A stretch of DNA of 64,000 nucleotides from Oopsacas minuta (GCA_024704765.1 JAKMXF010000066.1:751854-815853), one strand, 5' to 3'. Shown: positions 30,671 through 55,965, counted from the first letter of the stretch. Notes: generated by a model not told the origin, from the letters alone. Program-made: numbers and translations.

Positions 30671-32920
30671 CTACTTCGATAACTTTTTATTACTTCTCCA
30701 GAGTCGGTCGTATGCTTCAGAATTATTTCCTAATCCTTCACTACTGAGAGGAGAAACCCTATTCGCATTATCGTCATATTTACCAATCGGGAACAAGAGT
30801 GGTGATGATTTTGTGTTCATAAGGCTACTGAATAACTGATCATCAGTCTTACCACTTTCGTCTTGAAAAACCTGTTCCATTTCGAGGCATTCATCTGATA
30901 CTAATCTCTCACGTAATTTCCTTCTAAAATCCTGTATTTCATCCTCGTTTATATCAGCATAGGTTGCTAGTCGATTTTGCGCAAGGTTCATTGTACTTTC
31001 ATGAAGTTTGCTTTGGACGAGATCTTCTATTCGATTTCCTGAGGTTTTTCTATACCATGTTGTGTATATTATCACACATGTAAGTAGAATAATCACTAGC
31101 ACCAATAGACAAAGCACAAATGCCAATACAGCAACTGAAAATATTAGAATATAGTTTTGAATTAATTCTGGAAATGTGACTGTTTGATCATTTGGCGTAA
31201 TTGAGCAGATTTGAGGTTGATAAGGAGTCGTGAAATAATTTTGGATATTAGCACCTGTATAACCGATAATTTCTATTTCATATATCGCTAGATATTTACT
31301 TGAATTTAATGGTATTTGTAGAACTATTGTTTGCTCAGGTCTGTTTATGGAAATTTCTTTTCTATTGATTGAGTATTTTGATTCATTTTCAAGTTTTCCG
31401 GAAGAAAAATCGTTGATATCTATTTCTACATGATGATAACAAACTGTAGATATATAGTAATAATGCGAAAGTCTGATTGTAATATTTAATGCTGTTTCAT
31501 TTCCTGTAAATAGATAGAACTCGCTTTCGTTGTTCAGTTCCAACTTTGAAATATCACCTAAAGTTATGAAAATAAATACTAATATTGGTATGTTCTCCAC
31601 AATTCGACATTTAGGCACATTTTGTCACGGGAATTGACACTTAATATGTCAAAAAGTGTGACAGATGACAACAATAAATAAACAACAATAAAATTCGAAA
31701 ATCTCACATTCCTGTGCCGACGAAATTTTCACTAATTGAATGCTAGTCATAAATTCCAAAGTCTACATCTGATTGCCCTAAACGAAAAGTGTGAATAGAT
31801 ATGAAAATATACGCATATGAAAAATTTCTAATATCGGGTATACAACTAGAAATCACTAAGAGTATACATGCCAAATTTAGTATACTAATCTCTAAAGGTG
31901 TGAACAGGAGAGTGAACACATATATCAGCACAGTAGAAACTAACCTCTCTCTCCATCAAATAACTTCCCGATTCCTCCAATACACATTCCATATTCACAT
32001 ACACCCGTGTAATCACTGTTTGTATTTGAAACTGGAACTATACTCATCCCATATTCTATAATTGGAACCATTAACAAGAACTCTGTCGTAATTGGACAAC
32101 CAAATAATTCATACTGGACACAGTATTGCTTTGAATCAGGTATTACTCTCTCAATCTGAATGAATACAATATTATTCACATATATTAAGGGATAAATAAT
32201 TCTTCAATAATTTTCATAGCATAATCCCGTGATTACTCCTATTCCACTCAAAATATCCAGAAGTATAGCAAAAAATGAAAATTTCCCGAGATTTTCAGAA
32301 TACACTGAGGAGAATGTTAAATAATTCGGATAATTACACTATTCATGTGGGTGGTGAAGCTGAAACAAGTTTCCAACTAATAGTGGGCGAGTGAATGAAA
32401 CTAATTATGAAATAGGGAATTTGACAATAATTATACTTACTGATATTGACTGTACTGTGACTGGGTTAATATTAGCTCTGAATATGGAATTATCACTAAC
32501 TTCATTAATATCATTTATTGCGTAACTCATGCCATCTACCAAATATGTAAATTTATATAAACTCGAATTTACAGCTGATTCGTTCTGACACGTGTAAGAA
32601 TCATAGTTCCGTATTGCAACACCTGTAATTATATAGTACGCACTCCCTGTTTCGAATTTATTAAAATCGATAGTTATTTTATTGAAAATACTATCCAACT
32701 GCCAATATGTTTGCGAGTACAAATTCGGTATTCTTGGGAATTCGTTACTTCCATTATTTAACGCAAAACCATTCGTTTCAGTTGCCAAAAGTACTTGAGC
32801 TTTTTGCAGATCTTTCTGAATGACGCCATTGAATATTTCTTGCCTGCAGTCGAAGAATATATTTTGACTTTTCACAAAAATCGAAGCAAACAAAAATCCG
32901 TAAATAATCAACATATACAT
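30671..32920 (-). CDS. Kinase-less DDR-like receptor A (discoidin + DS-like + TM + Tyr tail). Exons 32920-32441, 32155-31945, 31557-30671
   Basis: YCVQYELFGC...YTGVC...CIGGIGKLFDGERG; LAIYEIEII; TM; tail with TYADI and AYDRL. Intron phases 0 and 1. Confidence 0.72.
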
Positions 32921-33269
32921 TTAATGTTATCTTTTTCTTTGTTATTCCAAGCCTAATTTCTGCTGGAGGAATTTGATCCGATGCTATCATCTCTGATTAA
33001 ATACCCACATTCTCCTTGGTTACTGAGTACGCAAATGGAATGTATTGAACTGACTGCACCATACAATACACGCGTTATCATTATTGTTATCAAAATGTTA
33101 TTGCAACAAAATAAGATAAATGTTATTTGTGTTAGCAAATCATTTGGGGATAATTCAATAAACAATATTTATATATTAATAAACACTCTCACACAAATCA
33201 CACTTATACACGCAATGTATAATATAATAGTAGGATGACGAGAATAATCGAAAAGTATAATCATGTCTG

Positions 33270-35464
33270 TTATTTATGCTTTACCCTGTCGTAAGCAGAG
33301 AACTCAACATTTCTCTCATTAACATCAAGTTGTCCATAAACAGTTGATACAGGTTCCTGTTTATCATTTGTATCATACAGTGTGTTCTCTAACATTTCAT
33401 ACTTAGAGGAACTGTCTGCAATCGCATCTGAATTATCGTATATAACTGGATTTGTGGCAATAGTATCAGACCTTTTCTGTTCGCTTTCTAGAGGTTCTTC
33501 AATAGAAAGAGCATTTGTTGTAGACAAGGGCTTTCTATGCGATTCCTCTTGTATTACGGGTATAGTTGGCAATCTGCCTACTCGAGTATCATTGTTTACA
33601 CCTGATTCAAGTGACCCTACAGCAATAGTAGCATATAGCGATTCGTTTCTTTCTTTGTTTGCGTTTCTTGTCAAATGTATATTTTCCTGGATTCCCCTGT
33701 ATCTATATGTAGTGTAGATACAACAAACAAATAACAACAATAATAAGAAGAATTGTATCACCACTATAATCGAAAAGACAGCATAGATCGCTGTGTTATC
33801 ACAAAATTCGATCTTTTGTGAAGGCAATGTGCTATTCATTGCAGATACTGTTGTCTTCTTAATTGGTGGTGTTGTTGGTGTTGAAATTTCGCATGGAGTT
33901 GTTGTTGACTCGTTGGGTGTTATTGGTGATGTTGCATTTACAATGGAGTACATGTATCCAATATCCAAAGGTCCGAGATTAATATCCTGGCTCAAAACTT
34001 CTACTTCACTCAGAACTAACTTTTTTTGCTCTTGTACATTCATATTTAGTTCAATCCTGTCAACAACCTCATTGATAGATAGACGTACATTATATGTATT
34101 ACTTGTGATATCAGAGGTGTCTGTAGTGAAGTACATATCTGGGTATACTAGCTGTATTTTTGGTGGTCGTATTTTCGTTTCGGTCTGATAACCGTAGAAT
34201 ATTATCTGAGATATGTTAACTGGGACTGCTAAGATTATGTTCAGTTTGAATGCACAATTAGTTTGTATGCTTGTGTCTCCATCTGAAAAACATCTCCAGC
34301 CAACTATGATGTTACTCTGACTGTTATCATTGTTATCACCTAATAGAAATAGTGTTAAAAGGACCTCGAATAGTAGCCGGGGTGATTATTCATATTTTAA
34401 CACCTTTGGACGGGGGGACATAATATATATATTCACACACTACATTCCATGAATCATAGCATTCTATACATGAATATATTCACCAACTCCCTAACGTGCT
34501 TCTGTGACGTGTTATGTCCCAGTTTCCATAGTTACCTCTTTGGTACTTAGCTATTATGAAATTTCCACTACTAACCTATTATTCCATCCATTAGTTGTCC
34601 CTTTCCTCCAAAGCACAGTTCATCATTACACCATCCAGTATACGTATCATCTGCCCCTCTATCTCCTTGAGTTTCTAACATAGGTCGACTAACAGTATAG
34701 CTTAATACTGCTGCTCTTGTCAAGGTATACCCAACTAGTCCATAACTAACACAGTAATTATCTGGTGTAGCCAAGAATCTTGAGATCTATTGAAAGAGTA
34801 TATCATTAATGAATGGAAGGTGTTGCATATTTGTAACAGTATGGTCTATTCAGAAATCTCAAATTTTAGCTTTTGACATTTCTAGATAGATCATACTGTA
34901 ACTGTGCCGACGAGATTATCTCAAATCAAATATTCAGGATTCTATTTGGACTAACTACGCTAATAAGGTGTGAATTAATATGTGATTCATGTATACAAAT
35001 GTTCCAAAATGTAAGATAAAACGAGTCCTTACATATATTTCTTCAGCTAAGATAGGTTCAATAGTCACCACCACGCTATTATTCGTCAGTAAATAACTGC
35101 TGTTAGGGTCCAGTCTAGTGCTTGTCTTTAAATTCTTGAATTTGTTTGTTATAAGATAATCGCTAATGTTTATATTATTCTCTCGTATACAATTATTCAC
35201 ACCATCACCCGCTTCAACTTTGATCTCAATTTGTGTAATTACAAACACGAAAATACAATTTTCTGGAAAAATATTATATTTTACTTCAAAGTTTGTTTGA
35301 TTTAAGATCGTTTCATTTCCAATTCTAATCAGTTCCCTTGAATTTGATCCTTCAACACACTCTACATTCACATTTCTAATAATTGGTTCGTAATTAGCAT
35401 TGGCTATCTGAAAAATCTGCAAAACACAAAATATGCAAATCAAGAATACAAAAACCTTTGCCAT
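33270..35464 (-). CDS. Kinase-less DDR-like receptor B. Exons 35464 (or 35512)-35033, 34786-34576, 34339-33270
   Basis: YCVSYGLVGY...YTGWC...CFGGKGQLMDGIIG; VGW; LVLSEVEV; Thr-rich stalk; TM; tail with SLYATI, SKYEML, TVYGQL, SAYDRV. Confidence 0.72.
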
Positions 35465-35779: not shown

Positions 35780-35849
35780 GAATTTACAAGTAATGTATTA
35801 TACGAATCCATATGTGAATTAGAAAAAGGTTTTAAATATACAGGCAAAG

Positions 35850-38414
35850 TTATTTATGTTTGAGAACGTTATACCCACTGAAATCACCTGTTCCCTCTGG
35901 TATAGCAATACAGCATTCATTTCCTATGGAAGCATAGATATGTTTGACGTCACAAACTTCTAGTGGCTCTTTTGTGCCATTTTTCATTTTGACACCTAAA
36001 CAATTCCGTGCTGAGACATACCCCGCATTGTCCACCATAGGAATACCTAAATGAGCTTGCTGGAGGGATTCTTGACAAGTTTCAATACATATTTCTGGGA
36101 GCTTATTATGATCTGTATAAGCTATATTGTCTTCCATCTGGACTTCGTGTTCATCTTGCACGCAAGTATCTTGATTAATATGTGGGACTGCCTGGTGACA
36201 GGACGTGTTATCGACTACAGTGATAGAAGAGCTGTTTTGATTCATTAAATTACTGTTAATACAGTATGTGGAGTTTCGAATGATTGGGTTTGCGTTGCTC
36301 GGTGAATCGAATCCGCTATCTCGCTGATTGCTAGTATCCCTCGTAGTTAGAGAATCATACACATCATCGATGGATATGCTATTCACAATTACAGTCTCTT
36401 GTTGTACATTTTCAGCGTAATTTCTGAAAGATTCGGTTTTCGAGTTTTGTAGTGCATGCAGTTTTCTCCTGACTTTACGGTTATTCCTGGCTAGCAGAAC
36501 TATTATGATTATACTGTTGAGTAAAGTTGTTATTACGAAAATCCCAAGTGTTCCGACTATTGAGAAAAATACAGATCTCGCCGTGCAATCGTCTTTAAGA
36601 GGTTGTGGATCGACTGCGGTTGATGCATCAATTTGAGTTGTTGAGATGGTTGAGATGGTTGATTGAAATGTGTTTGTATTTTCCATGGTTATAGTTGATT
36701 CTGTTGTTGTTGATGGTATTGTTGTACCAGTTTCAGTTCGATCTCCGATAGTTTGAGCGTCAAAAGAAGCTCCATTTTGAAAATTCGCAATATGTGAGCT
36801 AGTGGGCCGTTCTTCTTCAGGAATTTCGCCTACGTAATTATAGCCAACATTCTCAACAGCAATATTAACATCTTCACCAGTAAATACAGCTATTTCTGAT
36901 AGCACTATATTTGTACCAGCTGCTACTGTGAAAGAAAACTGGAATAAGTTCTCATTCGAGTCTATTGAGGTTGTAATTGAGTAAATATTGTCTATTAGGA
37001 TTCCATTTGTTGGACTTTTATCAGGATTACTTGTCATTTTCACTTCAGGTAATCGATCAGATCCTTGGATTAAACCGAATATGACTACTCTGCTAATATA
37101 AGCTGTTCTTGATAGCTTTATTTTTACGTAGAATATACAGGACTGGTCTCTGTCTGATTGGCAGTTCCAACCGACACCGTCTGTAGTAATTGTCTCGATC
37201 TCTAAGTAAAGAAAATAGAAAATATTAAACTCTAAACTAGAGATCACTACGAGTATCATAGTTTATACACATACCAAATTTTATGTTTGTAGCATCAATG
37301 AATAACTCATGATATTAGATATACATGTAAGTAAATATGTAAAATTCACACTTAACTAACCAGTATTGCCATCTGTCAATCTTCCCTTTCCTCCAATACA
37401 AAACTCGCTGCCACATAAACCAGTGTATTCATTGTCCATTTGCAAGTTCGGCACACTGATATCATAATTCAATACCGACACTCTTGCAATCTGATATCCG
37501 ACTAGTCCATACCGCATGCAGAAGGTCTCTTTGATCCCAGTTCTCTTCACTATCTTGAACAAATTGTTAAACCCAGATTTATAATTGAATTAAATAGAAT
37601 AGAATTGAATAACACTCCAAAAGTGTTAATTACTATACACTATATATATATCATATTGTTAATGGAGTATTAGCTTGTTAGAGTTCATTAATTAAATCAA
37701 TAATTGAGTATTAGATATAATTATAACACTTATAACAAATGAGGTTTAGTAAGTATGTGAATTATTCAGAATATTAAATGAGCGCGCGCTCCATTTATGA
37801 TTCAGGAGTGAAGGTGGAGCGCTCTATTTTGAAGGAGCAAACACACTCGAACACGCGGCTATTTAATCGCAAAAAACTTCAGTAATTTTTCAGATCAAGA
37901 GCACGGAGCGATATCCCACTCCAAAAAATGCGCAGCGCTTAATGCCCTGGAATTATTAAATGTTGTCTAAATATGAAAATAAATGCAATAAGATACTTAC
38001 TGTAATTGAGTCAGCAGGTATTGGTTCAATCTCAATTGAAGCTATGTGGTCACTAATATGTGTAGAATCTGTTGCTAAATTTAGAACGCGTGTTTCTTGT
38101 CCAATATTATAGCTAATTAGATAATCAGCTGACCTTATTGTTGTCTCAAGAGTGCAAGTAATCGAAGATCCCACAAATATTTGTATTTGTATTGACGTAA
38201 TTACGAATGTAAATGTTGAGGTATCTGCCGCCAGTCCGAATGTAACATCTGGATTATTACTGTTAATTAACCAGTAATTGTCAGAGTTTATGAAAGGGAA
38301 CGTGGATGTGATTAACCGCTCCCCATCAGTTGTCACATCCATATTTTCAAGAATGTGGATCTGTCCATAAACACGAAAGATTAGGAATAGAAAAACTACA
38401 AAAATGGACTTCAT
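35850..38414 (-). CDS. Kinase-less DDR-like receptor C. Exons 38414-38001, 37553-37361, 37201-35850
   Basis: FCMRYGLVGY...YTGLC...CIGGKGRLTDGNTG; GVGWNC; NIVLSEIAVF; Thr-rich stalk; TM; long tail with VYDSL, IYASI, SGYNVL. Confidence 0.72.
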
Positions 38415-39296: not shown

Positions 39297-41661
39297 TTAG
39301 AAATGTTGTAAGTTATTGTAATCATAGAACGTTTCTTTGCGAGGAATACTTTCATCATTTTTGAAAGATTGGCTGGCAGTGGGCTTCTGATGTCCTATAT
39401 TCTTTGTTCCAGTTTCAACCTCCCCGAGGGTTGATGATACAACCTTTTTCGAATTCCCCTCATAGACTAAATAATTATCCGTGAAGTCAATATTGGATTC
39501 TCCCCTTTTTTTAGCTTTAACCTGTGGCAAAATTGTCTGATTGATTGCCGGCGACCTGTCACTAATTTCATCATAGAATTCCGACTCCAAAAATGTTGAA
39601 TCGTCTGGAACTAAGGGTAGCGTCATAGACTTCCATTTTGTAGTTCTTGTCAGAGTTAAAATGAATTTTTTTTGTTGATAATATTTTATAAAGAGAATGG
39701 TGATAACTACAATTAATATTATTATCAAAGTAGACGCAAGGAATGAAATTAATCCCAGAGAGGTTTGATCAAATTCCTCACCTGCACATGTCAGAATACT
39801 CGATTGTATATTTATATCCTCTCTAAATAATATTTTGGTATCAAAATTATCATAAATACCTATACTATAAACGTCTGCGACATCTCCTGGATCTAAGCAA
39901 ATATCAAATGAGAAAATGTTCGAGATTTTCTTCGCTCCTGTTTGGAATGACTCTTTATAAATTTGAAACATTCCATATACTCCCCCGAACAGCGATTCAC
40001 CAGTTAAACAATTTCTTCTCCAAGGGAGAAGTATTTTCGGTAAAGACCTGTTTTTAATTGTCAGACCACTGATTGTCAAACTTTGTATCAGCACGCTGTA
40101 ATCCAGGAAGATTGTAATGTTTATTCTGCAAGGACTTTCCCCTTCACATGCCCACTTGAGTCGTTCTGCTGGTTTTACCATTTCTTCCATTAATGACTCT
40201 ATATAGAAAACCGTTATGTCAAACACAGATATAGCGTAATACCCATTTATATCCAAGTCATAAATTGTACAAATATGGTCCTAAACCGTCAGAGAAACAG
40301 AAATTCACAGTTAAATCGAACTCCGCTCATATCGAAGTAATTATCGCGGTCCCTTGAGTAACTGGCGCGGACTGTATATAACATTCTGTCTCAAAAAGTG
40401 TATTTTGGACAATTTATAGTTTTTAGACATTATTGAGTGAATTATAATAAATATAACTCACCGTCTCTACTGAAAATATATGATATTCCACCTGAGCATA
40501 TGTTATACGCTTTGTCACATACTTTCCCTTCAATCTGGTAGTTAGTTAGATCTCCTTCTGTAGGTGTAGTTGTCTCAAATCCGATTATGTGACTTGCATT
40601 CGTAATTGAACCCAAGAAATCAAAGCGAATACAAATGTTAGTGCCTTCAGGAATGTTCAGCATTTTAACCTAAGTAAATAACAATAAATTGAATAATGTA
40701 TAAAACTTGGAAATAATAAATAGTTAGGAAATATGCTACATACTTGTCAAATGCGCCATATCTTTGCACTTTTTGCAATTTTATCCGGTGACAATAGTGA
40801 CAAATATGTACATACTAGCCTCAGCGCCTCCCTCTGTGAGGCTTTTTCTGCTAGTTCCTGCGGAATGCTTTTTCGGCCCTCATTATTGTTTTTGGAGTTT
40901 GCGAATGCTACGCTTATTATACGAAGGAAGGAATTTGATTGGCCAACGTTGACCAATTCCTCCGAAAATGCATTGATTTATATGGGCGAGGTGTGAAAAA
41001 TTCACATATCTTGTCCAAAAATGGTTCGATTCGAAAAATAATTCTTATTTGGAAAGGTTGAGTACTACTACTTAGTCGACACACAAAATTTGGTTCGAAT
41101 CAGCCCCGGCATCTCTGAGACAACACACACACACACCTTGTTTTATATGTGTAGAAGATTTGTCTCTCTGATTATATAAATATTAGTTACCTGTATTTCT
41201 GAAGAAATAAACTTGTTAAAAGGTAGATTCAAAACCAAGTCCTCACTGTGTAGAGTATATTGCATGTCAGGAAGTTTAAATGTAACCAATTTGTTATTTT
41301 GCATGTATCCTATTTGAATTTTTTTCAAATCTAATACTGATAAATTCGCGCATTGTTCATTGCCCATTTTCTTTGAAGTTTGTATTAATATGCTGTCTAC
41401 ATTGTACATGAAAATAGAGGTGTTTATGTTTTGAGGTATTTCTATAGAAATTCTGTCGTTTTGGTTTGTGAATATCCAAGTGTTGTTTGCGTTTATATAA
41501 GGAAATTCATTGTTGTTAAGCACTAAGTTATTATTTATTTCATTCCCTCGCCAATCTGGAAAGAGCATAGATGTTTGCATCAAAACTTCAGTATTTTTTA
41601 CAAGAATCAATCCTTGTAAACATAACAATACAAATAATTTCATAATTGCGAAGATTTGCAT
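39297..41661 (-). CDS. Kinase-less DDR-like receptor D (most divergent). Exons 41661 (or 41643)-41191, 40669-40462, 40198-39297
   Basis: ICIRFDFLGS...CSGGISYIFSRDG; LKWAC; TM; tail with FYDEI and YDYNNL. Same intron phases as the paralogs. Confidence 0.65.
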
Positions 41662-42157: not shown

Positions 42158-43976
42158 CTAATGTCTACCAGAATGATCCAGTTTGTCATAATCATTAAAA
42201 GCATCCTCATTAATTACTGTAATCTCATTCTTATATGGTTCTTTAGGTGTTATTTTCCCTGCCGAATGCAGTCGCATCATCTCGGTAGATACATATTGAG
42301 GATTTTCACTTACGAAAACTTCAGAGTTACTTCTGTCCAATTTCCCTTGAGGATCTGGTGTTCCGTTTTTATCGTAAATGGGATTTTCTTCCAAACTGTC
42401 TTCTGAATTAAAATTTTCTCGTTTTTTACGTTCTAACGTTCGATTCCTGACTTGTTCTTCCAATGAATCAGTGAAACTAACCGGTTGTCTTGAGAGTTTT
42501 GGATTTCTTTCATGTGATAGAGGTTCCACTTGTGCCAAGGGTTCAATCCTGACAGGAATTGCGTTTTTCGTATCAGCTGCACTCGCTTGAGTTCTTATAT
42601 CAGTGTAAACATGCTGCGTCCTTTCATTATTTTGGATATTTTCAATATTTCGAGGTTTATAAGTACATTGTAACCATCCAGCCCTTTTGCGTACATACCA
42701 GGATATTATGGGGAGAGCGAATCCAATTATGAACATGATTAAGCCAATACCAACAATGATCAAACTAGCTGTGCTGTCCGGTAAACTATTCCCAAAAGTA
42801 GATTGTTTGGCGCATGACACTGTGGTTAGTTGGTTTTGTGTCCAATAAGTGATGAGAATTTCTTCGATTTCAAATGATTCGCCTATGTCAACACTTATTT
42901 CAAATTCTATAAAGTTTACTGCAGTTTCTAATGAAAACTTTATGCCTTGATCTACGTTCTGAGTTGGGAATTGAGAATTGGTACTTACATTTGCCACAGA
43001 TGTTAGGAATATTAATATATTTGAAATACCGACATGTTGGTAGAAGCTAATACTGAACTGTCCTGATCCTTCCCATTTTAGTGTGTTTTCTATGAACAAA
43101 AATATATGTTTAAATCAGTAATTATTCATCTATACAGCGGGTAGACCCCATTTGGGAACAACTACATGCAATGTTGGCCACTAAAGTTGAAAGAAAGAAG
43201 ATTGGCAGTTTCGCTGCAAAAAACATTTTGAAAACTCACTAAAGTTATCATCAATTAATTCTCCAATTCCTCCAGAACACCACTTGCCACTACAAACACC
43301 AGTGTATGTAGAGTCTGCGTCCGCTGGCTGTGTTGAATCGTATGAAAGTACTGGTCCGCAACCAGTAGGTCTGTCTGTACAGCCGTATAGCTCGTATTGT
43401 ATGCAGTAGACAACAGGATCTGTAACTTCTGTATTATTAAAGACCTTGCGTATCTAGAGAATAAACACGATCTATTATCAATATTTGCAAGTTTGCGAAT
43501 TAGTAAGGGAAATTCTTGCGATTATTATAGTACAACTTTTTCTCCAGATTTGCATACAGAATTCTTACCTGTATTGTAGATCCATAAGTTGTGATGAATG
43601 ATACCTTAATGAAAGTTTTATTGATTAATTTTCTATTTGGAAAATCTACTCGCTTTTTGTCAACAATAATTTCAAATTCTCTCAAATCAATTGAGCTCTC
43701 AACAAAGTTACAAGGCGATTTATTTTCCGTGTTTACTCTTATTCCAAATCCTGTTAAGTAGGTTGGGGTGTCTAATTCCCCCTCTACGATTTTATCTTCG
43801 CCTTTTAGCTGCCAATAATCACTCGAGTTAATTAGAGGGATTTCTTGACTAAGTGCTCCTGTAATTGTGAATTTATTCTTCCCAAGAAGACCATCATTAC
43901 AATTTCTAACGTCTATTGCGATAGTTAATGCTATTTGTAGCAATGTTATGAGGGAAATTATGAAACTCATTTGCAA
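42158..43976 (-). CDS. Kinase-less DDR-like receptor E. Exons 43976-43569, 43453-43240, 43089-42158
   Basis: Middle exon, absent from the ORF track, reads YCIQYELYGC...VLSYDSTQPADADSTYTGVCSGKWCSGGIGELIDD; LKW; FEIEEILI; TM; tail with VYTDI, IYDK, DYDKL. Confidence 0.75.
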
Positions 43977-47156: not shown

Positions 47157-49415
47157 ATGAATAAGTGCGTTTTGTTTGTTATTTTGTTGTTTTTCTCATT
47201 TGTAAACACACAATATTCTTCTAAATGCAATATACCGGTATTTAAATCACATGACGGATATTTTGTTGATTTTCGCTTTCCTTCTGAAAGTATTTCACTG
47301 ATATATGGAAATTCTGATTTAAATATTTCTTCATGGAAAGAGTTTGGCTCAATATGGAAAGTAACAAAACTCAAGAATTTTATAGATATTGAATTCACGA
47401 ATCCAATAATTATATCCAGTTTTGCAATCAATTTTTGCATTGAAGAAGATGAAAATGATTGTAGAGAATACTCAAAAACAGATTTTTCTGTTTTCAAATT
47501 TGATTATATATCTCCGGGTTCTCCCGGTTTCACACGTTTAAAACCGATCCAATATCCTGACGGATTAATTAAACTCTCAATTCTATCTGAAGGCCTACCA
47601 AATGAGATAGGTTTCAACCAGATTCTTGCTAATTACATACGGGTAAGCGAGTAATTTGATATTTAAAATACGTATTTATCTGATGTCAGTACTGTATGGA
47701 ATAACTTAGTGGAGGAGCTAGACATTGTAGGTTGAAGTTATGTACAACAAAAATTCATATTCACGATTACACTAGCTTATAAATTTGTAATATTACAATA
47801 TGTCTGATAGTATCAGTCCATTGTTACACTTGCTGACAAGAGTATAGACTATTAGCACTAAGTATTATTGCTGGCTATTGCTATCATCTTCAATTCGTTT
47901 GCCATACGACTCTTGTCTCATACCAACGAGAGTATACTCATAATTGCCAGCTGTCTCGCCTTTTCTTCACTCAGGTTGGCAATTATGTATACACCTACAT
48001 AACTTTTCTCCATTTAGATAACCAAGAATTACGCTCTATCAGGATCTGAAGAGAGTAACTATCTCATACAATTAGAACTGTTTGGCTGCTCACCTCTTCC
48101 TGACAATGTACTCTCTTTAAACGATAAGGTTATCCACTATGACGTATCTCCAAGCTTCATGGATTATTCTATTAATATACTGGACCATGGATGGTGTAAT
48201 AATGAGGCTTGTAGTGGATTAACTGGAACTTTAATTGATGGAATTATGGGTGAGTTTACTGCATTAATATTTTGGTTATAATGGGAACAGCTGCTATAGA
48301 TCAAACTGTAAATTCTTATTATATTTGTAGTTTACAGATCTATTCTTGCTTCAAACTCAAATACGCTAAACTGGGGAAATAAAGGACAGCCAATAAACAT
48401 ACAAATATTCTTCAAAGATAACTACAATTTTACTAATTTTGTCGTTCACTGCATTTCAAGTCAGAATTTGAAAAATTGCATCCCTCAAGCAATTATTGGG
48501 GGAACTACACAAAAAGCAAAGACTATATTTTCAAAAGGAACCTCACATGGAATATTTGGGTTTAGCCAAGAAGGTAACACATTGGAAATACAGTTATTGG
48601 TTCCTAGAGGTGTTGAATTTATACTCTCAGAGATAGAAATATTTGGTGAAGAAATAGTTGGAAGTGAAAATTTTGCTCAAAATACATTGCAACCGCAATT
48701 TGTGTCAATTTTTATTTCTTCAATTTTCTTCACGATTACTCTTGCGCTGATAATCCCACTGTTAATTGCTGTTGTTATTATTTGTTTCAAAATCAAGAAA
48801 CAGACAGTGTATTTCCCAATCCAGCAGGAATATTTCAAATCTCAAAAACCAACACCAAACACATTTCAAACAGAAATATTACGAGCGAAAGATGAAGAAA
48901 AATTCCAGAATCCTACCAGGATAACAATCGACTCCCTCGATCAAGCTCCTATTACTGGGGACTCAATTAAGCGTCTGGATACAAGCGTATTGAACAATAT
49001 GTACGAACGTATACCCACTATATCTACACTACAAGGAAACAAAATGCGAGAATCTTTCAAGAGACCGAATGCGATGGACGTAGGTATTTCACCCACGCCA
49101 CGCCTGAAACTACCTGAAATACCAATTTATAGTATCCCAAATAAAACTAAAGCTACTAACAGTCTTAACAGACCCGCATCGCATGAAGGGTATTTGGAAA
49201 TAACAGATCTGAGCGTCAATGGAATTTCTCCTACATTCCCCAATTCAGAAGATGAGAATCCTCTATATGACTATATACGTCCGAGATCTGCTTTGCTTCC
49301 TGTTAATAGCGATTCTAACAATTCAATTACTTCACCTATCTCTGAGTATGTCAACAGTAAACAAAAACAACAGCAATATATTAACATGAATAATAATAGC
49401 ACTACTGCTCTTTAA
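47157..49415 (+). CDS. Kinase-less DDR-like receptor F. Exons 47157-47642, 48018-48249, 48331-49415
   Basis: LIQLELFGC...GWC...CSGLTGTLIDGIMG; LNWG..INIQIFFKDNYNFTNFVVHC (cf. DDR VEMEFEFDRLRAFQAMQVHC); FILSEIEIF; TM; tail with MYERI, GYLEI, LYDYI, EYVN, QYINM. Confidence 0.75.
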
Positions 49416-49709: not shown

Positions 49710-50300
49710 TTAAGTTGAAGCTACAAATGTGTCAGATATATCGTCTCTGTCACAAATTTCATCTATAGAATCCATACGGCTTTCTTTAAACCTCAAGTGT
49801 GTAGGTAACATCTCCTGATAAGCACTCTCCGTACTGATCGATTTCTGGAACTTATTTCGACTATTTGTTTGTGCTATTGTTTGTTCTGTTGTTGTTAATG
49901 TTGTTGATGGTGGTGTCGTGGGTGTCGTTGGTAAAGATGTTGGTGTAGGTGGTAGTGTGTGTGTATTTGCAAAAGATGTTAGTACAACATTTTGTCTACA
50001 ATTCAATCGAATATTTCCTCTTTGATTTTCTATCATACCAGCTGGGTTGACTTCAGAGTAAATTGTACCATCTCTTTCCAAACGGGGTTTAACTTTTCGT
50101 GTAGTTTCGTTCTGAACTGATCTCTCTCCAATACGATAACAAACCACACAACAAACTACACAACAACTTACACAACAACATATAATAATCAAAACAACTC
50201 CAATTATCCCTGTGAGGATTTTTTCTAGCAATATCTTTACGGGAATTATCAAAACCTCTTCTTGAGTTGCGTTTAATCCTGAAGGAATTATTTCAACCAT
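49710..50300 (-). CDS. Small single-pass membrane protein with a Cys-rich juxtamembrane segment and Tyr tail (transmembrane-adaptor-like G)
   Basis: TM ILTGIIGVVLIIICCCVSCCVVCCVVC, then TIYSEV and SAYQEM. The 5' end is uncertain because an AG acceptor lies just upstream. Confidence 0.6.
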   Translation of the reverse strand: MVEIIPSGLNATQEEVLIIPVKILLEKILTGIIGVVLIIICCCVSCCVVCCVVCYRIGERSVQNETTRKVKPRLERDGTIYSEVNPAGMIENQRGNIRLNCRQNVVLTSFANTHTLPPTPTSLPTTPTTPPSTTLTTTEQTIAQTNSRNKFQKSISTESAYQEMLPTHLRFKESRMDSIDEICDRDDISDTFVAST

Positions 50301-50529
50301 TTCTATGAAACTTTAATTCTCATATTCCCTACGGTTTATATATCAAATTCACCACATTCATTTCTGTATTCGTAAGCTAAAAGATTGTTTAGTTGTCAAT
50401 TCTATACAGCCGATTTGTGGTACTTTTAACAAGAAATATGGCCCAGGATTATCCAAGTATTAAATCTACCTAATCATGCTATTTTGGATAAAAAATATTT
50501 TTGGCTTAGGTAGGCTCTATTAATAGAAC

Positions 50530-50830
50530 AAATCTCAAATCACCGCCTGTGCAGACTAAAATTTACCAAATTAGCTTTTGTTGATTATTGAAGTTATATT
50601 ATTCTATTAAATATCAGTTTTAGCAAAGAAAGAAAACATTCTTAGACAGTTGAAAGTGTCAAGTTTGAATTCTACTTCCCTTTTACCCCTAGTTAACAAG
50701 TGGAAGCTAATGTCTAAGATTATTTTAAACTGTTTACTAAAATGTGTGAAAATATGATTAATCAGTGTGTGTGTATATAGTTAATAGAATGTATTGACCA
50801 ATTTAATTGCAGTCTACATCCATACAAATA
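50530..50830. repeat. Interspersed ~300-bp repeat; second copy at ~51780-52095 and inverted partial copy at ~57608-57725
   Basis: Shared blocks aacaagtggaagctaat, ggtgtgaaaatatgattaatca and aatagaatg.attgaccaat. Confidence 0.7.
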
Positions 50831-51089
50831 CATGTCACTACGAGTACACATGCCAAATTTGGTACCATAATCTCTAAAGGTGTGTATAGGAGAGCGAAAA
50901 CAGTCGGAATGTTCCCACAAAATAGACATTCCTAATTCACTGACCTTAGCAACAAAAGAGTTGACCAATAGCTTATAATTCAAAATTCCAACAAATGTAT
51001 ATTGAGCTGTAAAAACGCTTGTTATTATTACAATTTGACACCTCTGTAGAAATATGAGTAATCAAATAATATAGAGCTAACAAAGGCTA

Positions 51090-51575
51090 TTACTTGTTTA
51101 CGTAATGGTGATCAGTTGGTGGTGTGAAAAATCTCACTTTACTTGGTTCGATATAATCATACTGAAAACTATCATCACTTGCCTTGTTGTTGTTTATTAT
51201 GCTGTATCTATGAGCTGTTGATGAGATACTTTCATAAATATTTTGTGCGTTGTCAAGTAAAGAATATCTAATATTGTTTTCCGTGTCATCTCTGATGATC
51301 GAATTCTGCCTCCTACATTTGAAATTTTTGTATATTTTGTAAGTTTTTAGTGGTACTTTCCTATGTAAATAATAAAAGCAACAACAACAAAAACAACATG
51401 TAAATATGCATATTAAGCATAAACAAACTGAGATTATCGCGAATATAATCGTAGAATAAAACCAAAGAGTTTTAGTTGAAAAACATTCAGTCAATTCTTC
51501 GAAAAGATAGCTTTCTATTTCTGCAAAATTTAGTTCAACAAAAGTTAAAAGTAAACACAACAACAAATAAATCAT
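51090..51575 (-). CDS. Transmembrane-adaptor-like protein H (161 aa): signal peptide, ~15-aa ectodomain, TM, poly-Cys, Tyr tail
   Basis: CLCLICIFTCCFCCCCFYY; RRQNS; NIYESI; SFQYDYIE; HYVN. Confidence 0.65.
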   Translation of the reverse strand: MIYLLLCLLLTFVELNFAEIESYLFEELTECFSTKTLWFYSTIIFAIISVCLCLICIFTCCFCCCCFYYLHRKVPLKTYKIYKNFKCRRQNSIIRDDTENNIRYSLLDNAQNIYESISSTAHRYSIINNNKASDDSFQYDYIEPSKVRFFTPPTDHHYVNK

Positions 51576-52184
51576 TTTGAATTTGTTTAGCTTTTGTGTA
51601 TCAAACGTGTATTTATGTAACTTCTTATTAACACCAGATTTTAAGCTTTGCCTATACTTAAAATGATTATATGAATTTTCTTACACACATGTGATTTGTG
51701 AAAGTCTATTTGTTGTTATTGAGTATTACCTAATGATGAATAAGAGTTCGGATCAAAGTTTGGATAAATTCTAAGAACAAAAATCCAAAATCGCCGTCTG
51801 TGCCGACTTTACCAAATTAAGGATTATTGAAACTGTATTATTCTATTAAATATCCATTCCAGCAAAGAAAGATAAATTTGAACTTTAATAATCTTGTTAG
51901 ACGTCTGAAAATGTTAAAATCGAATTATACGTCCCTGTTTACCCCTATTTAACAAGTGGAAGCTAATCTCTAGGATACTCTTGAAATATTCACCAAAAGG
52001 TGTGAAAATATGATTAATCATATGATAAATCAGTGTATATATATATTTAATAGAATGCATTGACCAATAGAATTACAGTCTACATCAATACAAATGCATT
52101 ACAGTGCTAACTAAACTACAAACACTCCATCAGAACTACTTCACACTTAACACTTCCTCCACTTTAATAATATTATGAATATAC

Positions 52185-52766
52185 TTAAGGTATTGTGTAT
52201 ATATTATTAACACTTGGAACTTTAGGTAGATCCACGTAATCGTACATGAAACTGCTATCATTCTCAGCAGTAAAACTATTACTAAATGTTCTTGTTGGTA
52301 GACTAGGATTAGATGTTGATAATCTGCATACCATTGCTTGTGTTTGGTTGCTAAGCATAGTTGTGTCAGTCATTAGTCTTCCGTTGGTGTGTAAGCTATT
52401 AATAGTATCATAAAAGTTCGATTCTTCAATTCCTTGTTTGGTAGTTTTTCCCTTTTGAAGTGTGTTTTGCCTTCTAGCGTAGTAAATTTTTGTAATCCTG
52501 CCATTATTACATTTTTTATAACAACAAAAACAACAACAACAAATTATAGCACCAACAAAACAACAACAAATTTCAACACCTAAAATACCAATAGTTATAT
52601 GGAACCACATATTTTGTGTTAGTTGCGGACTCGAACAATTTTGCCCATTCACAAGCGGGCAAAATAAAATGAGAACTAATAATGAAACAAACTCCATCTC
52701 TCTCTTCAATTCATCATATTTTTGTCCGTTTATATATTTCAGGATTTCCTGTGCAGTTCTACGCAT
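52185..52766 (-). CDS. Transmembrane-adaptor-like protein I, paralog of H; probable start at the internal MEFVSLL
   Basis: Signal peptide, tiny ectodomain, TM with ICCCFVGAIICCCCFCCY, RRQNT, FYDTI, SSFMYDYVDL, IYTIP. Confidence 0.65.
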   Translation of the reverse strand: MRRTAQEILKYINGQKYDELKREMEFVSLLVLILFCPLVNGQNCSSPQLTQNMWFHITIGILGVEICCCFVGAIICCCCFCCYKKCNNGRITKIYYARRQNTLQKGKTTKQGIEESNFYDTINSLHTNGRLMTDTTMLSNQTQAMVCRLSTSNPSLPTRTFSNSFTAENDSSFMYDYVDLPKVPSVNNIYTIP

Positions 52767-53600
52767 ATATTATACTATACTATTGATTCAGTTGCAGTAA
52801 ATACCTTATTTACGTAATTAATGTGTGGATGCTACCATAAGCAACTTTGCGGAGAACTCTATTATGTTGAAAGTTAACCTAAGTAATTGAACTATCTGTA
52901 ATCTGCAAGTTTTGGGAATTTACACTTTCAATCATTACACCCCGAGGAGGGGCGTGTTCAGAGTGCAAATAAATAGCATACTGATTAGATGGGACATCGT
53001 GGGATGTAGTATATTTGCATTGGACTTCTAAAGCGGATAATTAAGGTTTGTGGCAAGTTTTGGCGGGACACTAGCCTCATTGACCCTCAACACATGTCCA
53101 AAAAAGCCAGCGGGATGTCCCGTCAAAATCGGAACAGTTGGCAAGTATGCAATAACTCCTGCGGGAAGAGTATCTTATCGGACACCCTCCTTCAAATTGG
53201 GTGACGAATCCAGTTAATTTGTATATCACATCTCAACCAATATAGAATCTCTTCCTTTCCAAGTGTGTAAACAATTAAATTTGATTGTCCAGAAACATAA
53301 CACGCCATTTTCCAAAGAGGTGTTAACATTATTGATCCACTATTTATAGTATAGATTAACAAACGCATATTCACTAATCACTATTAGTTCCATATTATAT
53401 CATATTTAATTATTTCCTTAATTATCCTATTCATAAACCCAAAATTGAATTAAGGTAAATTGAGAGATACCAAATTCAAATTGGAACAATCGTATGTACG
53501 ACAAACACCCTTTCAAATTCCAATTTGTGACGTGACAGGTGTCTTCAAATTTTGGTATATATTATGAAGTTAGCGACACAAATCAAATACTCAATCCCAA

Positions 53601-55965
53601 ATGATACTATTTTCCTTAATAATATGCTGTGTTTTTGCAAACAAATGTTTTGTATTTGCAATGCTTCCGAGTTTTGAAGCTACGAATATTTGCAATCAAC
53701 GAATTCTCACAGATATCTCACAAACTGCAATTGATAATCTCGTTATGTACTCAAATGTTTTATCATATCAACTCCCCGGAGAACTTCAAATACCTTTAAT
53801 TACCCAAAACGAATCATTTTGGCTGTTGAATTCGATGGACACTATAACCTTCGACTTCCAATACGCGTTAGCAAAACAATTCTGGATAACTGGCATTGCT
53901 ATAAATCAAAACGTCCCTTACAATCCTTCGTTGGAAACATTTTGCAATTTTGGAATAGACCCAAACGACGCACAATTCTATGCAATAGATAATATTTTCG
54001 ATAATAAGGTAAAGTATTTGGAATCAGAGTATATAGAGAATGACAAATATTCATTTGATCCTACTGGCAGAGGTGTGAATGTCTCCGTTAAAATAGCAGT
54101 CAAGCCAGTTCTATCAGATGGAATTAAGGTAATTTTCATTTTTCAGAATAGTGTAATCTCCACAAATGAGGTCTTTGGTAACTGGAAACGGAATATAAAT
54201 AGACCGAGTTCTATAGCATTTTTGGCGTCCCTGTCACCCTGTTTGTGTAATATGGGGTCTAGAATTTGACCCTCATCCAATATTATAATTAGTAAACCTC
54301 TACAGATCACCAAGCTGTATGGCAAGGACAACACATTACCACGCTGTGTACGTATAGACTTATACGGATGCGAGATGACTGAGACTTCTTTGATTTATCC
54401 AACAATTCTCTTCTACAATTCTCCAATACCTGATGTGATAATCTCCACAGAGGACACTAATATTCATTATACTGGTGTCTGCTCAGAACTGTCTTGTACA
54501 GGGGGAATGGTATATTGACAGATGGACTATCAGGTGAGACTCTTAATGTAATTAAAGACAGGGAAAGTGTCTATTGGCTGGGTCAATTGTCCTGAGACAT
54601 CTTTTTCTGGTAGAGGCCACTCTGGCGTTCATTTTGCAATTTTGAAAATGTGGATATATAAAGTGGTTGGCCACAAGTTTGTGGTTGCATAATTCCACTT
54701 TTGGAGTTTTTTTTAGTGCCATATTGGGAAAGGTGTTAAATATACTATCATAAATAAATTCGTTGCAACAACAAACAACATGTAAATAACTTCTTATTCT
54801 ATTTTTAGGTTCACAAACATACCCAGACAACACAATCGGATTCAAGAATTGTTCAAATTGTGAAATCACATTTTTCTTCAATTCATTGGTAAATATAAAC
54901 GTTATTAAAATACATGGAGTGTCTACATTAACACCAGAAGCTTACCCTCCCTACAGAGTTATGATTCCAGACGAAGGTGTTGATAAAATCACATATGATC
55001 CTTCAAACTTCACAAGAGGATTTGATTACTCAACAGAGATGTATTATTGTATAGAAATACAAAGAAATTTCGAGTCTTTGCCAAGAATATCAATACAATT
55101 GGAAGCGTTTAATAACTCAAATATTTTACTGAATGAGATACAATTCTATTCAGGGATTGTGTCATTAAATTCTCAAACTGATATTCAAGAAATTGAACAC
55201 CAAGAAACTACTACCACACCAGGACCTAGTAATCCACTACCACCACCAACACGACCACCACCACCACCAACAGCACCACCACCACCACCAACAGCACCAC
55301 CACCACCACCAACAGCGCCACCACCACCACTGCCAAATGGAAATATACTTCCAGCAACTGAGCCATCTGAACCAACTGAGTTTCCACCTCCCCAGCCTCC
55401 TGGAACGACTGTGGATAATATTTTCGACCTCAGTTCTCCCACTACGATAATTTCAATCCTCCTGTGTTTGGTATGCACCCTCACAGGCTGTGTAGGTCTA
55501 TTTATAGTAACAATCTGCTGGTTTTTATTGATAAAGTATAAACTACGCTATGTTGTGGTGAAGGAAGAAGTGAAAAAACGCAAAATGCATCAAGAATCAA
55601 TGTCAAAAGGCACAATTCCAACATACACCCAGGCAACCGAAATGGCATTTGAGAATGTTTCAGATAGCACATCCGCCAGGACACCACCGTTACCTCAAAA
55701 CCACCCTCTCCCTAATTCGTACCCTCAGGAGCAAATCTATGAACTGATCCCTAATGACAGAAGGCAACATTCGATAGTCAGAAGTGTCTACGAAGTAGAA
55801 AATATGGATGACTTTACCCTTGGGAATTATGCGGAGTTACAAATACATGCAAATACTAATCCGTTCAGTAATACTTCAATAAGAAGTCCTCAATATAACT
55901 CCAATCACTTAACCATCACGGAGAACATCGAGGAAGGATATATTGCAATGTCCCCCATTAAATAA
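53601..55965 (+). CDS. Kinase-less DDR-like receptor J with a Pro-rich stalk. Exons 53601-54128, 54306-54533, 54809-55965; a -1 frameshift in the G5 run at 54501-54505
   Basis: RCVRIDLYGC...YTGVC...CTGG[NGILTDGLSG after adding one base]. Exon 2 is 228 nt, whereas all six paralogs have 3n+1. ILLNEIQFY; (PPPPTA)n stalk; TM; tail with QIYELI, NYAEL, GYIAM. Confidence 0.72.

What the first reader, a model, noticed from the sequence alone, without database searches (positions are those of the whole stretch)
30671..55965. Tandem family of seven kinase-less DDR-like receptors with tyrosine-motif tails
Seen in the sequence: seven genes (A 30671-32920, B 33270-35464, C 35850-38414, D 39297-41661, E 42158-43976, F 47157-49415, J 53601-55965) share a 3-exon plan with phase-0 and phase-1 introns. 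Their middle exons carry C-x3-[EG]-L-[FYV]-G-[CY]...Y-T-G-x-C...C-x-GG-x-G-x-L-x-DG-x2-G. Exon 3 continues with (V/L)xW, an F/Y-x-F-like strand and [LF]SE[IV], then a stalk, one TM and a cytoplasmic tail ending in a stop within the same exon. Established knowledge: this matches the junction of the discoidin (DS) and DS-like domains of DDR1/2 (CLRVELYGC...DSTYDG...GGLGQLADGVVG...VGW...WLLFSEISF). DDRs are collagen-binding receptor tyrosine kinases. Here no GxGxxG, HRD or DFG follows the TM, and intergenic gaps are too short to hold kinase exons. The discoidin exons are so divergent they barely align by eye. Inference: a lineage-specific, rapidly diversifying receptor array that reuses the DDR ectodomain and signals through recruited kinases or phosphatases. 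It is a candidate immune, allorecognition or matrix-sensing complex.
Basis: partly seen in the sequence, partly recalled or inferred. Interest (0 to 1): 0.87.

Follow-up and report, generated by a model that had tools for sequence, protein, structure and literature searches.

The report
Kinase-less DDR-type receptor array, glass sponge
A glass-sponge genome carries a conserved row of seven membrane-protein genes with the outer part of collagen-sensing DDR receptors but no kinase, so they cannot signal as DDRs do and probably work through tyrosine docking motifs in their tails.

Summary
Seven three-exon genes lie at the stated coordinates, all with GT-AG introns (phase 0, then phase 1). Six give uninterrupted proteins of 515-652 aa. 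J has a real 1-nt frameshift in exon 2, yet it is transcribed and spliced as modelled. The organism is Oopsacas minuta; NCBI lists the genes as hypothetical proteins.

The DDR reading of the ectodomain is well supported:
- A profile built from sponge sequences only hits every DS+DS-like protein tested (Hydra 1e-27, DDR kinases 1e-15 to 1e-6), but not neuropilins, factor V/VIII or CNTNAPs.
- The reverse profile hits 6 of 7 genes.
- An AlphaFold model matches the DDR1 ectodomain best (Foldseek 1.5e-9; DS-like Z 13.6).
- The DS-like calcium ligands are kept in 6 of 7.
- No kinase domain or kinase motif follows the TM.

The "lineage-specific, rapidly diversifying, allorecognition" part is not supported. 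The same genes, in the same order, occur in two other assemblies. Two haplotypes of one show pN/pS 0.18 for E and no differences in B and C.

Tail tyrosine motifs (NPxY, ITIM-like, C-terminal YxxL/V) are conserved between orthologs. I read these as non-catalytic DDR-family receptors; their signalling is inferred, not shown. The scan's first readers noted DDR-like genes elsewhere in this genome (unchecked).

The parts
32441..32920 (-). Gene A exon 1: signal peptide + most of a divergent discoidin (DS) domain
   Evidence: ORF and phase-0 GTAAGT donor. ESM-feature neighbours are F5/8 type C clusters, score 0.93.
31945..32155 (-). Gene A exon 2: last DS strand (YCVQYELFGC) + start of DS-like (YTGVC..CIGGIGKLFDGERG)
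   Evidence: Joined exactly this way in NCBI-derived P0002.
30671..31557 (-). Gene A exon 3: rest of DS-like, TM, 130-aa tail ending AYDRLW...
35033..35464 (-). Gene B exon 1 (signal peptide + DS)
   Evidence: Ortholog L001:11773-12189, 47% identity.
34576..34786 (-). Gene B exon 2 (DS/DS-like junction)
   Evidence: Ortholog 72% identical with the same splice sites.
33270..34339 (-). Gene B exon 3: DS-like, Thr/Pro stalk, TM, tail with SLYATI and C-terminal AYDRVKHK
   Evidence: DDR-ectodomain HMM E 4e-12 on the spliced protein. Motifs conserved in the ortholog.
38001..38414 (-). Gene C exon 1
37361..37553 (-). Gene C exon 2
35850..37201 (-). Gene C exon 3: DS-like, long Thr-rich stalk, TM, 211-aa tail ending GYNVLKHK
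41191..41661 (-). Gene D exon 1
40462..40669 (-). Gene D exon 2: degenerate junction motif, both Ca-ligand positions lost
   Evidence: No hit to the DDR HMM.
39297..40198 (-). Gene D exon 3 (TM + tail ending FYDYNNLQHF)
43569..43970 (-). Gene E exon 1 (ATG at 43970)
   Evidence: Identical to KAI6659218.1 / P0004.
43240..43453 (-). Gene E exon 2
42158..43089 (-). Gene E exon 3: DS-like, TM, tail with two NPxY motifs and C-terminal DYDKLD
   Evidence: AF2 model of the E ectodomain matches DDR1. Motifs conserved in the ortholog.
47157..47642 (+). Gene F exon 1
   Evidence: Identical to KAI6659220.1 / P0007.
48018..48249 (+). Gene F exon 2
48331..49415 (+). Gene F exon 3 (FILSEIEIF, TM, 208-aa tail with NPLYDYI)
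53601..54128 (+). Gene J exon 1
   Evidence: RNA-like run X4 joint 54128->54306, GT..AG.
54306..54533 (+). Gene J exon 2, interrupted by a 1-nt deletion
   Evidence: Joints on both sides in X4. Contigs of all 4 runs agree with the window here.
54501..54518 (+). J frameshift: G5 run 54501-54505, with the resulting premature stop at 54516-54518
   Evidence: No insertion or deletion reported there in any run.
54809..55965 (+). Gene J exon 3: DS-like, PPPPPTA-repeat stalk, TM, tail; readable only in the shifted frame
   Evidence: Best match to the DDR HMM when read with X at the break, E 4e-14. Joint 54533->54809.

Best explanation
These are seven tandem paralogs (six intact; J frameshifted but expressed) of a glass-sponge family of type I membrane proteins. 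The ectodomain is a diverged copy of the discoidin-domain-receptor ectodomain: a discoidin (DS) jelly-roll followed by the DDR-specific DS-like domain, with its calcium site kept. A stalk, one TM helix and a 120-210-aa disordered tail without any catalytic domain follow. Shown: the gene structure; homology and fold of the ectodomain; absence of a kinase; conservation of the array in other sponge assemblies; purifying selection; and conservation of specific tyrosine motifs (NPxY, ITIM-like S-x-Y-x-x-I/V, C-terminal Y-[DN]-x-[LV]). Inferred: the ectodomain binds an extracellular matrix or glycan ligand. The tail then acts as a docking platform once its tyrosines are phosphorylated in trans, either by cytoplasmic tyrosine kinases or by kinase-bearing DDRs. 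NPxY would recruit PTB-domain adaptors, as in the DDR1 juxtamembrane region. On this reading they are non-catalytic receptors or co-receptors of the DDR family, not kinases. I put the identity part at about 0.9 and the phosphotyrosine-docking mechanism at about 0.45.
For: Gene models: identical to NCBI models for E and F. J introns are seen as GT..AG joints in run X4. Splice positions are conserved in orthologs.

Homology:
- The exon-2 profile has a single hit in all PDB sequences, DDR1 4AG4, exactly at the DS/DS-like junction (E 0.031).
- The same profile against 1.84 billion proteins finds a Hydra 2x(F5_F8_type_C + DDR1-2_DS-like) protein at E 2e-4.
- An HMM of 20 DDR-type ectodomains hits spliced J 4e-14, B 4e-12, A 4e-8, E 8e-7, F 1e-5 and C 4.5e-5 at Z=20000, spanning CLRxELYGC through WLLISEI.
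- Shuffled and reversed controls do no better than E 6.8.
- An HMM of sponge sequences only hits all DS+DS-like proteins (1e-27 to 1e-6) but not discoidin-only proteins.

Fold:
- The AF2 model has pLDDT 78.8.
- Its top Foldseek hit is 4AG4_A at 1.5e-9, against 2e-5 for the next hit.
- VIA gives Z 13.7 for the whole ectodomain and Z 13.6, rmsd 2.6 A, for the DDR1 DS-like domain 8PE9.
- The family-only model independently gives a discoidin fold for the N-terminal domain.
- ESM features agree.

Other points:
- Ca ligands D233 and E361 (PMC3320712) align with the D of GGxGxLxDG and the E of [LF]SE[IV] in 6 of 7 genes.
- No kinase.
- Tyrosine motifs are conserved at 36-40% overall tail identity.
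- Synteny in two further assemblies.
- pN/pS 0.18 and zero differences in B and C.
Against: - No member reaches Pfam's own cut-off for PF00754 or PF21114. The best is 17.9 bits against a cut-off of 27, for the paralog P0011.
- The confident DS-like model came from an alignment that included DDR sequences. The family-only alignment left that domain below pLDDT 50.
- D matches no DDR profile and has lost both calcium ligands.
- No canonical ITAM is present.
- The NPxY and YxxPhi motifs are equally good endocytic signals.
- Nothing here shows phosphorylation, a ligand or a partner.
- RNA evidence covers J only, and J is the broken copy.
- Collagen-contact residues could not be mapped, because exon 1 aligns poorly to DDR DS domains.
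Confidence: 0.62

Rival explanations
1. Endocytic, scavenger or adhesion receptors. The DDR-type ectodomain captures a matrix or glycan ligand. The NPxY and C-terminal YxxPhi motifs act as AP-2/PTB sorting signals (as in LDLR or LAMP), not as phosphotyrosine docking sites.
For: NPxY in E (two copies, conserved), F and P0011. A YxxL/V within 5-10 residues of the C-terminus in A-E, G-Y-x-x-L in C and its ortholog. No ITAM. CBM32-like folds are typical carbohydrate binders (PMC3320712).
Against: Several conserved tyrosines sit in ITIM-like or acidic contexts (SLYATI, DDVYDSL, HVYTDI). These are not classical sorting signals. Tails of 120-210 aa with 5-9 tyrosines are long for pure sorting signals.
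Confidence: 0.2
2. Decoy or modulatory partners of kinase-bearing DDRs.
For: They share the DS + DS-like ectodomain. Sponges have DDR kinase orthologues (PMC6485061). Unchecked first-reader notes report kinase-bearing DDR-like genes elsewhere in this genome.
Against: Ectodomains are extremely diverged from DDR kinases (15-18% identity) and from each other, so shared ligands or dimer interfaces are doubtful. W187 and the N211 glycosylation site of the DDR1 interface are not conserved. No kinase-bearing partner was examined here.
Confidence: 0.12
3. A polymorphic immune or allorecognition complex under diversifying selection.
For: Tandem array of divergent paralogs with ITIM-like motifs. Receptor exons evolve faster than the neighbouring kinase: 37-47% against 81% identity between species.
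Against: 1:1 orthologs in conserved order in two other assemblies. Two haplotypes about 1-2% apart show E pN/pS 0.18 and no differences at all in B and C. Only one SNP and one repeat-unit indel in 5 kb across four runs of the window's sample.
Confidence: 0.04
4. A generic tandem of two discoidin/CBM32 domains (as in neuropilin b1b2 or factor V/VIII C1C2) that resembles DDR only by shared fold, not by specific descent.
For: The family-only AF2 model ranks FV/FVIII and neuropilin tandems above 4AG4. Pfam thresholds are not met.
Against: A sponge-only HMM hits all DS+DS-like proteins but not neuropilins, FV/FVIII or CNTNAPs in the same test set. The only PDB sequence hit is DDR1, at the junction. 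For the second domain, DS-like Z is 13.6 against 9.8 for the best non-DDR match.
Confidence: 0.02

Closest known systems
Discoidin domain receptors DDR1/DDR2 (collagen-activated receptor tyrosine kinases; structures 4AG4, 8PE9, 2WUH)
   Same: Type I membrane proteins with an N-terminal DS domain joined directly to a DS-like domain. Shared features: the CxRxELYGC end of DS, GGxGxLxDG and [LF]SE[IV] carrying the Ca ligands, a Pro/Thr-rich extracellular stalk, and an NPxY motif in the cytoplasmic part of some members.
   Different: No kinase domain at all. DS domain too diverged for Pfam. An extra Cys pair (YTGxC...C-x-GG) not present in DDR1. W187 and the N211 sequon not conserved. Collagen binding unknown. 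They form a separate long-branched clade.
Kinase-less DS+DS-like membrane proteins of cnidarians (Hydra XP_065679766.1, Clytia 'DDR tyrosine kinase B-like' 518 aa, Nematostella 'DDR2' 556 aa); automatic annotations only
   Same: Same architecture: DS + DS-like, TM, short non-catalytic tail.
   Different: The cnidarian proteins pass Pfam thresholds easily (1e-54 and 3e-36) and group with DDR kinases in the tree. Their tails are shorter (about 25-110 aa) and do not share the sponge motifs. They were not seen as a seven-gene array.
Non-catalytic tyrosine-phosphorylated receptors (immunoreceptor-type ITIM/ITSM receptors) and NPxY receptors of the LDLR type
   Same: Single-pass receptors without enzymatic domains, whose tails carry conserved short tyrosine motifs.
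   Different: Unrelated ectodomains. No canonical ITAM. Phosphorylation not shown. This is a resemblance of working principle only.
Truncated or kinase-dead DDR1 isoforms (DDR1d, DDR1e) of mammals
   Same: DDR ectodomain without kinase activity.
   Different: Those arise by alternative splicing of a kinase gene. Here they are separate genes with a stop codon in the TM/tail exon.

Membership tests
DDR family (discoidin domain receptor tyrosine kinases) | N-terminal discoidin / F5-8 type C domain | tested here: met
   Met by fold, not by Pfam score. The family-only AF2 model has pLDDT 70-85 for residues 30-140 and matches FV/FVIII C, neuropilin b1 and DDR2 DS (TMt 0.55-0.58). VIA Z is 10-11. ESM features point to F5/8C clusters. 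Pfam PF00754 is not detected on exon 1.
DDR family (discoidin domain receptor tyrosine kinases) | DS-like domain (Pfam PF21114) directly after DS | tested here: met
   Custom DDR-ectodomain HMM gives E 4e-14 to 4.5e-5 for 6 of 7 genes. The reciprocal sponge-only HMM is specific for DS+DS-like proteins. VIA Z is 13.6 to 8PE9. Caveats: Pfam's own cut-off is not reached (at most 17.9 of 27 bits), and gene D is not detected.
DDR family (discoidin domain receptor tyrosine kinases) | Calcium ligands of the DS-like domain (DDR1 Asp233, Glu361) | tested here: met
   Equivalent D in GGxGxLxD and E in xxE[IV] are present in A, B, C, E, F and J, and lost in D and its ortholog. Positions are taken from PMC3320712.
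DDR family (discoidin domain receptor tyrosine kinases) | Cytoplasmic tyrosine kinase domain | tested here: not met
   No Pfam kinase hit on any exon 3. No GxGxxG, HRD or DFG. A stop codon lies in the same exon as the TM. The J transcript continues past its stop without a further joint. The neighbouring kinase is a separate Ser/Thr-type gene.
DDR family (discoidin domain receptor tyrosine kinases) | Collagen-binding loop residues of the DS domain | tested here: inconclusive
   Exon 1 does not align reliably to DDR DS domains; the HMM alignments start at model position about 125-165. The residues cannot be mapped.
DDR family (discoidin domain receptor tyrosine kinases) | Interface Trp187 and Asn211 glycosylation site (strictly conserved in vertebrate DDRs) | tested here: not met
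   No Trp after ELYGC in any of the seven genes. A sequon at the N211 position is seen only in the species-2 ortholog of E.
Non-catalytic tyrosine-motif receptors (ITIM/ITAM/NPxY type) | Single-pass receptor without a catalytic domain, with tyrosine motifs conserved in the tail | tested here: met
   Conserved between orthologs: S[LM]YATI and FSxYD[RK][VI]KHK (B); DDVYDSL, KHIYASI and GYNVL[KR]HK (C); HVYTDI, NPIY, NPQYV and YDKLD (E).
Non-catalytic tyrosine-motif receptors (ITIM/ITAM/NPxY type) | Canonical ITAM (YxxL/I x6-12 YxxL/I) | tested here: not met
   The regex finds none in any tail.
Non-catalytic tyrosine-motif receptors (ITIM/ITAM/NPxY type) | Tyrosine phosphorylation and SH2/PTB recruitment | not testable with these tools
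   Needs biochemistry.
Allorecognition / polymorphic immune receptor loci | High allelic polymorphism with excess non-synonymous change; rapid gene turnover | tested here: not met
   Haplotypes L001 and L002: E has 8 non-synonymous and 12 synonymous differences (pN/pS 0.18); B and C have none in 1229 codons. Orthologs are 1:1 and the order is conserved. The sample is small: two haplotypes of a relative.

The most novel reading that the evidence does not exclude
The array is one half of an ancient paired-receptor system. The kinase-less DDR-type proteins, each with a different DS surface, would pair with kinase-bearing DDRs or with Src/Syk-type kinases to read out different matrix components of the syncytial glass-sponge body. 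They would do so through ITIM-like and NPxY tails. That would make it a non-catalytic phosphotyrosine receptor family that arose independently of, and long before, vertebrate immunoreceptors.
Probability: 0.15. Interest if true: 0.75.

Novelty: new variant of a known kind. Interest (0 to 1): 0.5.

Why it matters
DDRs are the only receptor tyrosine kinases activated directly by collagen, and they are known to predate bilaterians. This array shows that the DDR ectodomain was also used, in an early-branching animal, on receptors with no enzyme. It was then kept as a multi-gene array across species. That gives a concrete set of genes for two questions: what the DS/DS-like module bound before or beside collagen signalling, and how tyrosine-motif tails without kinases work in sponges. 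It also corrects the public annotation. All seven are 'hypothetical proteins'. Three of the five models I could inspect (A, D, J) are wrong, and B and C were not recovered with their middle exon.

Tried and rejected
- Pfam on single exons gave nothing for exon 1. It gave only sub-threshold PF21114 hits for exons 2 and 3. The spliced proteins had to be analysed locally.
- The search for homologous proteins with C exon 3 found one ORF fragment from a relative. With a family alignment it returned only the query itself, so no genome-wide paralog count was possible. One solitary paralog (LOD99_5900) came from the representative search.
- A first large alignment with separate exon fragments of B and C was visibly misaligned (A4) and was dropped.
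- The family-only AF2 run did not resolve the DS-like domain.
- Between-species dN/dS was not computed. At about 40% protein identity, synonymous sites are saturated. Haplotype pN/pS was used instead.
- Collagen-contact residues could not be mapped.
- I considered that the J frameshift was an assembly error. I rejected this because contigs of all four runs, including the RNA-like one, agree with the window. All four come from one sample, however.
- I considered onward splicing to the nearby kinase. I rejected this because the kinase lies upstream of E, has its own start codon and is a complete Pkinase domain.
- The paper searches found no paper on this family.

Full report
**What is in the sequence.** ORF listing and six-frame reading of 30671-55965 show seven units. 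Each has a long 5' ORF with an N-terminal hydrophobic signal-like segment, a short middle ORF and a long 3' ORF. The 3' ORF contains a hydrophobic TM-like segment and ends in a stop.

Searching for splice sites gave one consistent solution for each unit. There is a phase-0 GT donor at the end of exon 1. A phase-0 AG acceptor lies in front of an I/V-x-[KR] start of exon 2. A phase-1 donor (G|GTxAGT) follows directly after the DGxxG motif. A phase-1 acceptor follows a pyrimidine tract.

- Six genes then translate without interruption: A 525, B 570, C 652, D 526, E 515, F 600 aa.
- J does not. The conserved CTGG-N-GILTDGLSG is split between two frames by a missing base at the G5 run 54501-54505. 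This gives a stop at 54516-54518.
- tblastn of the spliced proteins against the window shows that paralogs recognise each other only through exon 2 (30-47% identity). No further copy is present in the 64 kb.

**Identity of the organism and annotation.** A profile of the exon-2 peptides was searched against 1.84 billion representative proteins. It returned spliced proteins that are the window's own genes. According to the cluster look-up they are Oopsacas minuta (glass sponge) 'hypothetical proteins': LOD99_14891 (E), LOD99_14893 (F) and LOD99_14895 (J).

- E and F are identical to my models.
- The A and D models start late.
- The D model removes the TM by an extra intron.
- The J model avoids the frameshift by using a donor after HYTG.
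- One more paralog, LOD99_5900 (P0011), lies alone on another contig with the same three-exon plan.

**RNA and DNA reads.** Four runs of one sample hold the region. Laid on 51000-56000, three behave as DNA. X4 behaves as RNA and shows two joints, 54128->54306 and 54533->54809, both GT..AG. These are exactly my J introns and contradict the NCBI J model.

No run shows an insertion or deletion at the G5 run. The frameshift is therefore real in this sample, and J is transcribed and spliced nonetheless. The J transcript contig runs past the stop to the end of the laid stretch (56000) with no further joint. Their models rest on the NCBI models and on conserved splice sites.

**Conservation.**
- The only database relative of C exon 3 (P0001) led to two 98-99% identical contigs of an ENA assembly (L001 and L002).
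- Those contigs carry, in the same order as the window: F (reversed), the Ser/Thr kinase, E, D, C, B, a remnant of A and an LRR-EGF receptor.
- Their exon borders are the same.
- A third assembly (L004) has C-B-A in order, with A complete.
- Ortholog identity is 37-47% in exon 1, 55-72% in exon 2 and 36-40% in exon 3. The neighbouring kinase is 81% and 68% identical.
- The receptors therefore evolve fast, but the duplications are old.
- Between the two haplotypes, E has 12 synonymous and 8 non-synonymous differences (pN/pS 0.18). B and C have none in 1229 codons.

**Is the ectodomain DDR-like?** Sequence evidence:
- The exon-2 profile has exactly one hit with E<10 among all PDB sequences. It is the DDR1 ectodomain 4AG4, aligned at CLRVELYGC...DSTYDG...GGLGQLADG (E 0.031).
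- Pfam PF21114 (DDR1-2_DS-like) is hit weakly but collinearly by five exon-2 peptides (profile 22-45) and by J exon 3 (profile 68-177).
- In the 1.84-billion search the profile reaches a Hydra protein at E 2e-4. That protein scores 1e-54 for F5_F8_type_C and 3e-36 for DS-like in Pfam.
- From the Hydra protein I collected 13 DDR kinases and 7 cnidarian DS+DS-like ectodomains and built an HMM. Against the spliced sponge ectodomains at Z=20000 it gives J 4e-14, P0011 2e-12, B 4e-12, A 4e-8, E 8e-7, F 1e-5 and C 4.5e-5. D gives nothing.
- The best of 231 reversed or shuffled controls is E 6.8.
- The reverse test is free of circularity. An HMM built only from the sponge sequences hits every DS+DS-like protein in a 100-protein test set (Hydra 1e-27, DDR kinases 1e-15 to 1e-6). 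It does not hit the neuropilins, coagulation factors or contactin-associated proteins, which have discoidin domains only.

Structure evidence:
- With a family-only alignment, AlphaFold2 gives a moderately confident N-terminal domain and an unresolved second domain. Foldseek then finds FV/FVIII C domains, neuropilin b1(b2) and DDR2 DS.
- With DDR-type sequences added, the model reaches pLDDT 78.8, and 85-95 in the second domain.
- For that model the best PDB match is 4AG4_A at 1.5e-9, four orders of magnitude ahead of the next hit.
- VIA-align gives Z 13.7 over both domains. It gives Z 13.6, rmsd 2.6 A, to the isolated DDR1 DS-like domain, against 9.8 for the best non-DDR match to that domain.
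- ESM features of A exon 1 point to F5/8 type C clusters.
- The DDR1 structure paper (PMC3320712) names Asp233 and Glu361 as calcium ligands of the DS-like domain. By the numbering of the alignment, these are the D of GGLGQLADG and the E of LFSEI. Both are kept in A, B, C, E, F and J, and both are lost in D and its ortholog.
- Trp187 and the Asn211 sequon, conserved in vertebrate DDRs, are not kept.

**No kinase.** No Pfam kinase domain matches any exon 3. No GxGxxG, HRD or DFG occurs in any tail. The TM, tail and stop codon are in one exon. The only kinase nearby (44167-45940, minus strand) is a complete two-exon Pkinase gene with its own start. It lies upstream of E, is of Ser/Thr type (HRDLKCEN) and is itself conserved in synteny.

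**Tails.** At 36-40% overall identity, particular tyrosine motifs survive between orthologs:
- B: S[LM]YATI, STVYG and FSxYD[RK][VI]KHK at the C-terminus.
- C: DDVYDSL, KHIYASI and GYNVL[KR]HK at the C-terminus.
- E: HVYTDI, NPIY, NPQYV and FNxYDKLD.

A motif scan finds ITIM-like sites in B, C and J, and NPxY in E, F and P0011. Every gene has YxxPhi, and none has an ITAM. This selective conservation shows that the tyrosines matter. It does not tell docking from sorting.

**Relation to known proteins.** On the DS-like region the sponge proteins form one side of a branch (SH-aLRT 93) with very long terminal branches. Orthologs pair, and B and C are sisters. The cnidarian kinase-less proteins group with the DDR kinases. 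Those cnidarian proteins are also type I proteins with short non-catalytic tails. A kinase-less DDR ectodomain is therefore not unique to this sponge, although it is known only from automatic annotation. Literature searches found that sponges have DDR kinase orthologues (PMC6485061). They found nothing on kinase-less DDR-type arrays or on discoidin proteins of Oopsacas.

**Verdict.** The evolutionary and functional gloss (lineage-specific, rapidly diversifying, allorecognition) is not supported. The best reading is a conserved family of non-catalytic DDR-type receptors or co-receptors whose output runs through conserved tyrosine motifs. The ligand, phosphorylation and partners remain inferred. 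Other first-reader notes report DDR-like genes, some with kinases, elsewhere in this genome. I could not check them.

Noticed in passing
window 49710-52766 (minus strand ORFs 49710-50300, 51090-51575, 52185-52766): Three small single-TM genes with Cys-rich membrane or juxtamembrane segments and no Pfam match lie between F and J. Two carry a [FQ/FM]YDY[IV] motif like F's NPLYDYI. In the RNA-like run X4, 52169-52669 has word depth of about 5000-7500, against about 100-300 for J, so this gene looks very highly expressed.
   Followed up: partly
window 55254 (J exon 3, PPPPPTA repeat): The X4 contig lacks 21 nt, exactly one PPPPPTA repeat unit. DNA contigs of the other runs break at 55283-55287. 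This may be allelic repeat-number variation or an assembly collapse.
   Followed up: no
window 51835-52168 and 53004-53170: Word depth rises to 3900-16000 (and 540-2200) in the three DNA-like runs, with many loose ends at 51993-52032. These are high-copy dispersed repeats in the intergenic DNA.
   Followed up: no
window 44167-45940 (minus): A stand-alone two-exon Ser/Thr-type protein kinase (Pkinase 9e-41 and 4e-18) sits between E and F. It is 81% and 68% identical and syntenic in the second species, so it is a stable neighbour of the array. It is not a tyrosine kinase.
   Followed up: partly
L001:14309-14860 versus L004:17473-19389: In the second species the ortholog of A is reduced to a TM + tail ORF, with only 356 bp between it and B. 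The third species has a complete three-exon A. This is lineage-specific loss of an ectodomain.
   Followed up: partly
L001:5965-6752 versus L002:5915-6703: Exon 3 of the D ortholog is split into two overlapping ORFs in one haplotype and is a single 262-aa ORF in the other. This is a possible segregating frameshift, like J in the window.
   Followed up: no
NCBI models KAI6659222.1 (J), P0002 (A), P0005 (D): There are public annotation errors. J uses a donor that the RNA joints contradict. A and D start inside exon 1. D has an extra intron that deletes the TM. B and C did not appear among full-length hits, so they may be mis-annotated or unannotated.
   Followed up: partly
L005 (GCA_046554155.1, 440-nt contig) / P0021: An ORF runs from the exon-2 motif straight into exon-3-like sequence without an intron. 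It is either transcript-derived sequence or an intron-less relative in another assembly.
   Followed up: no
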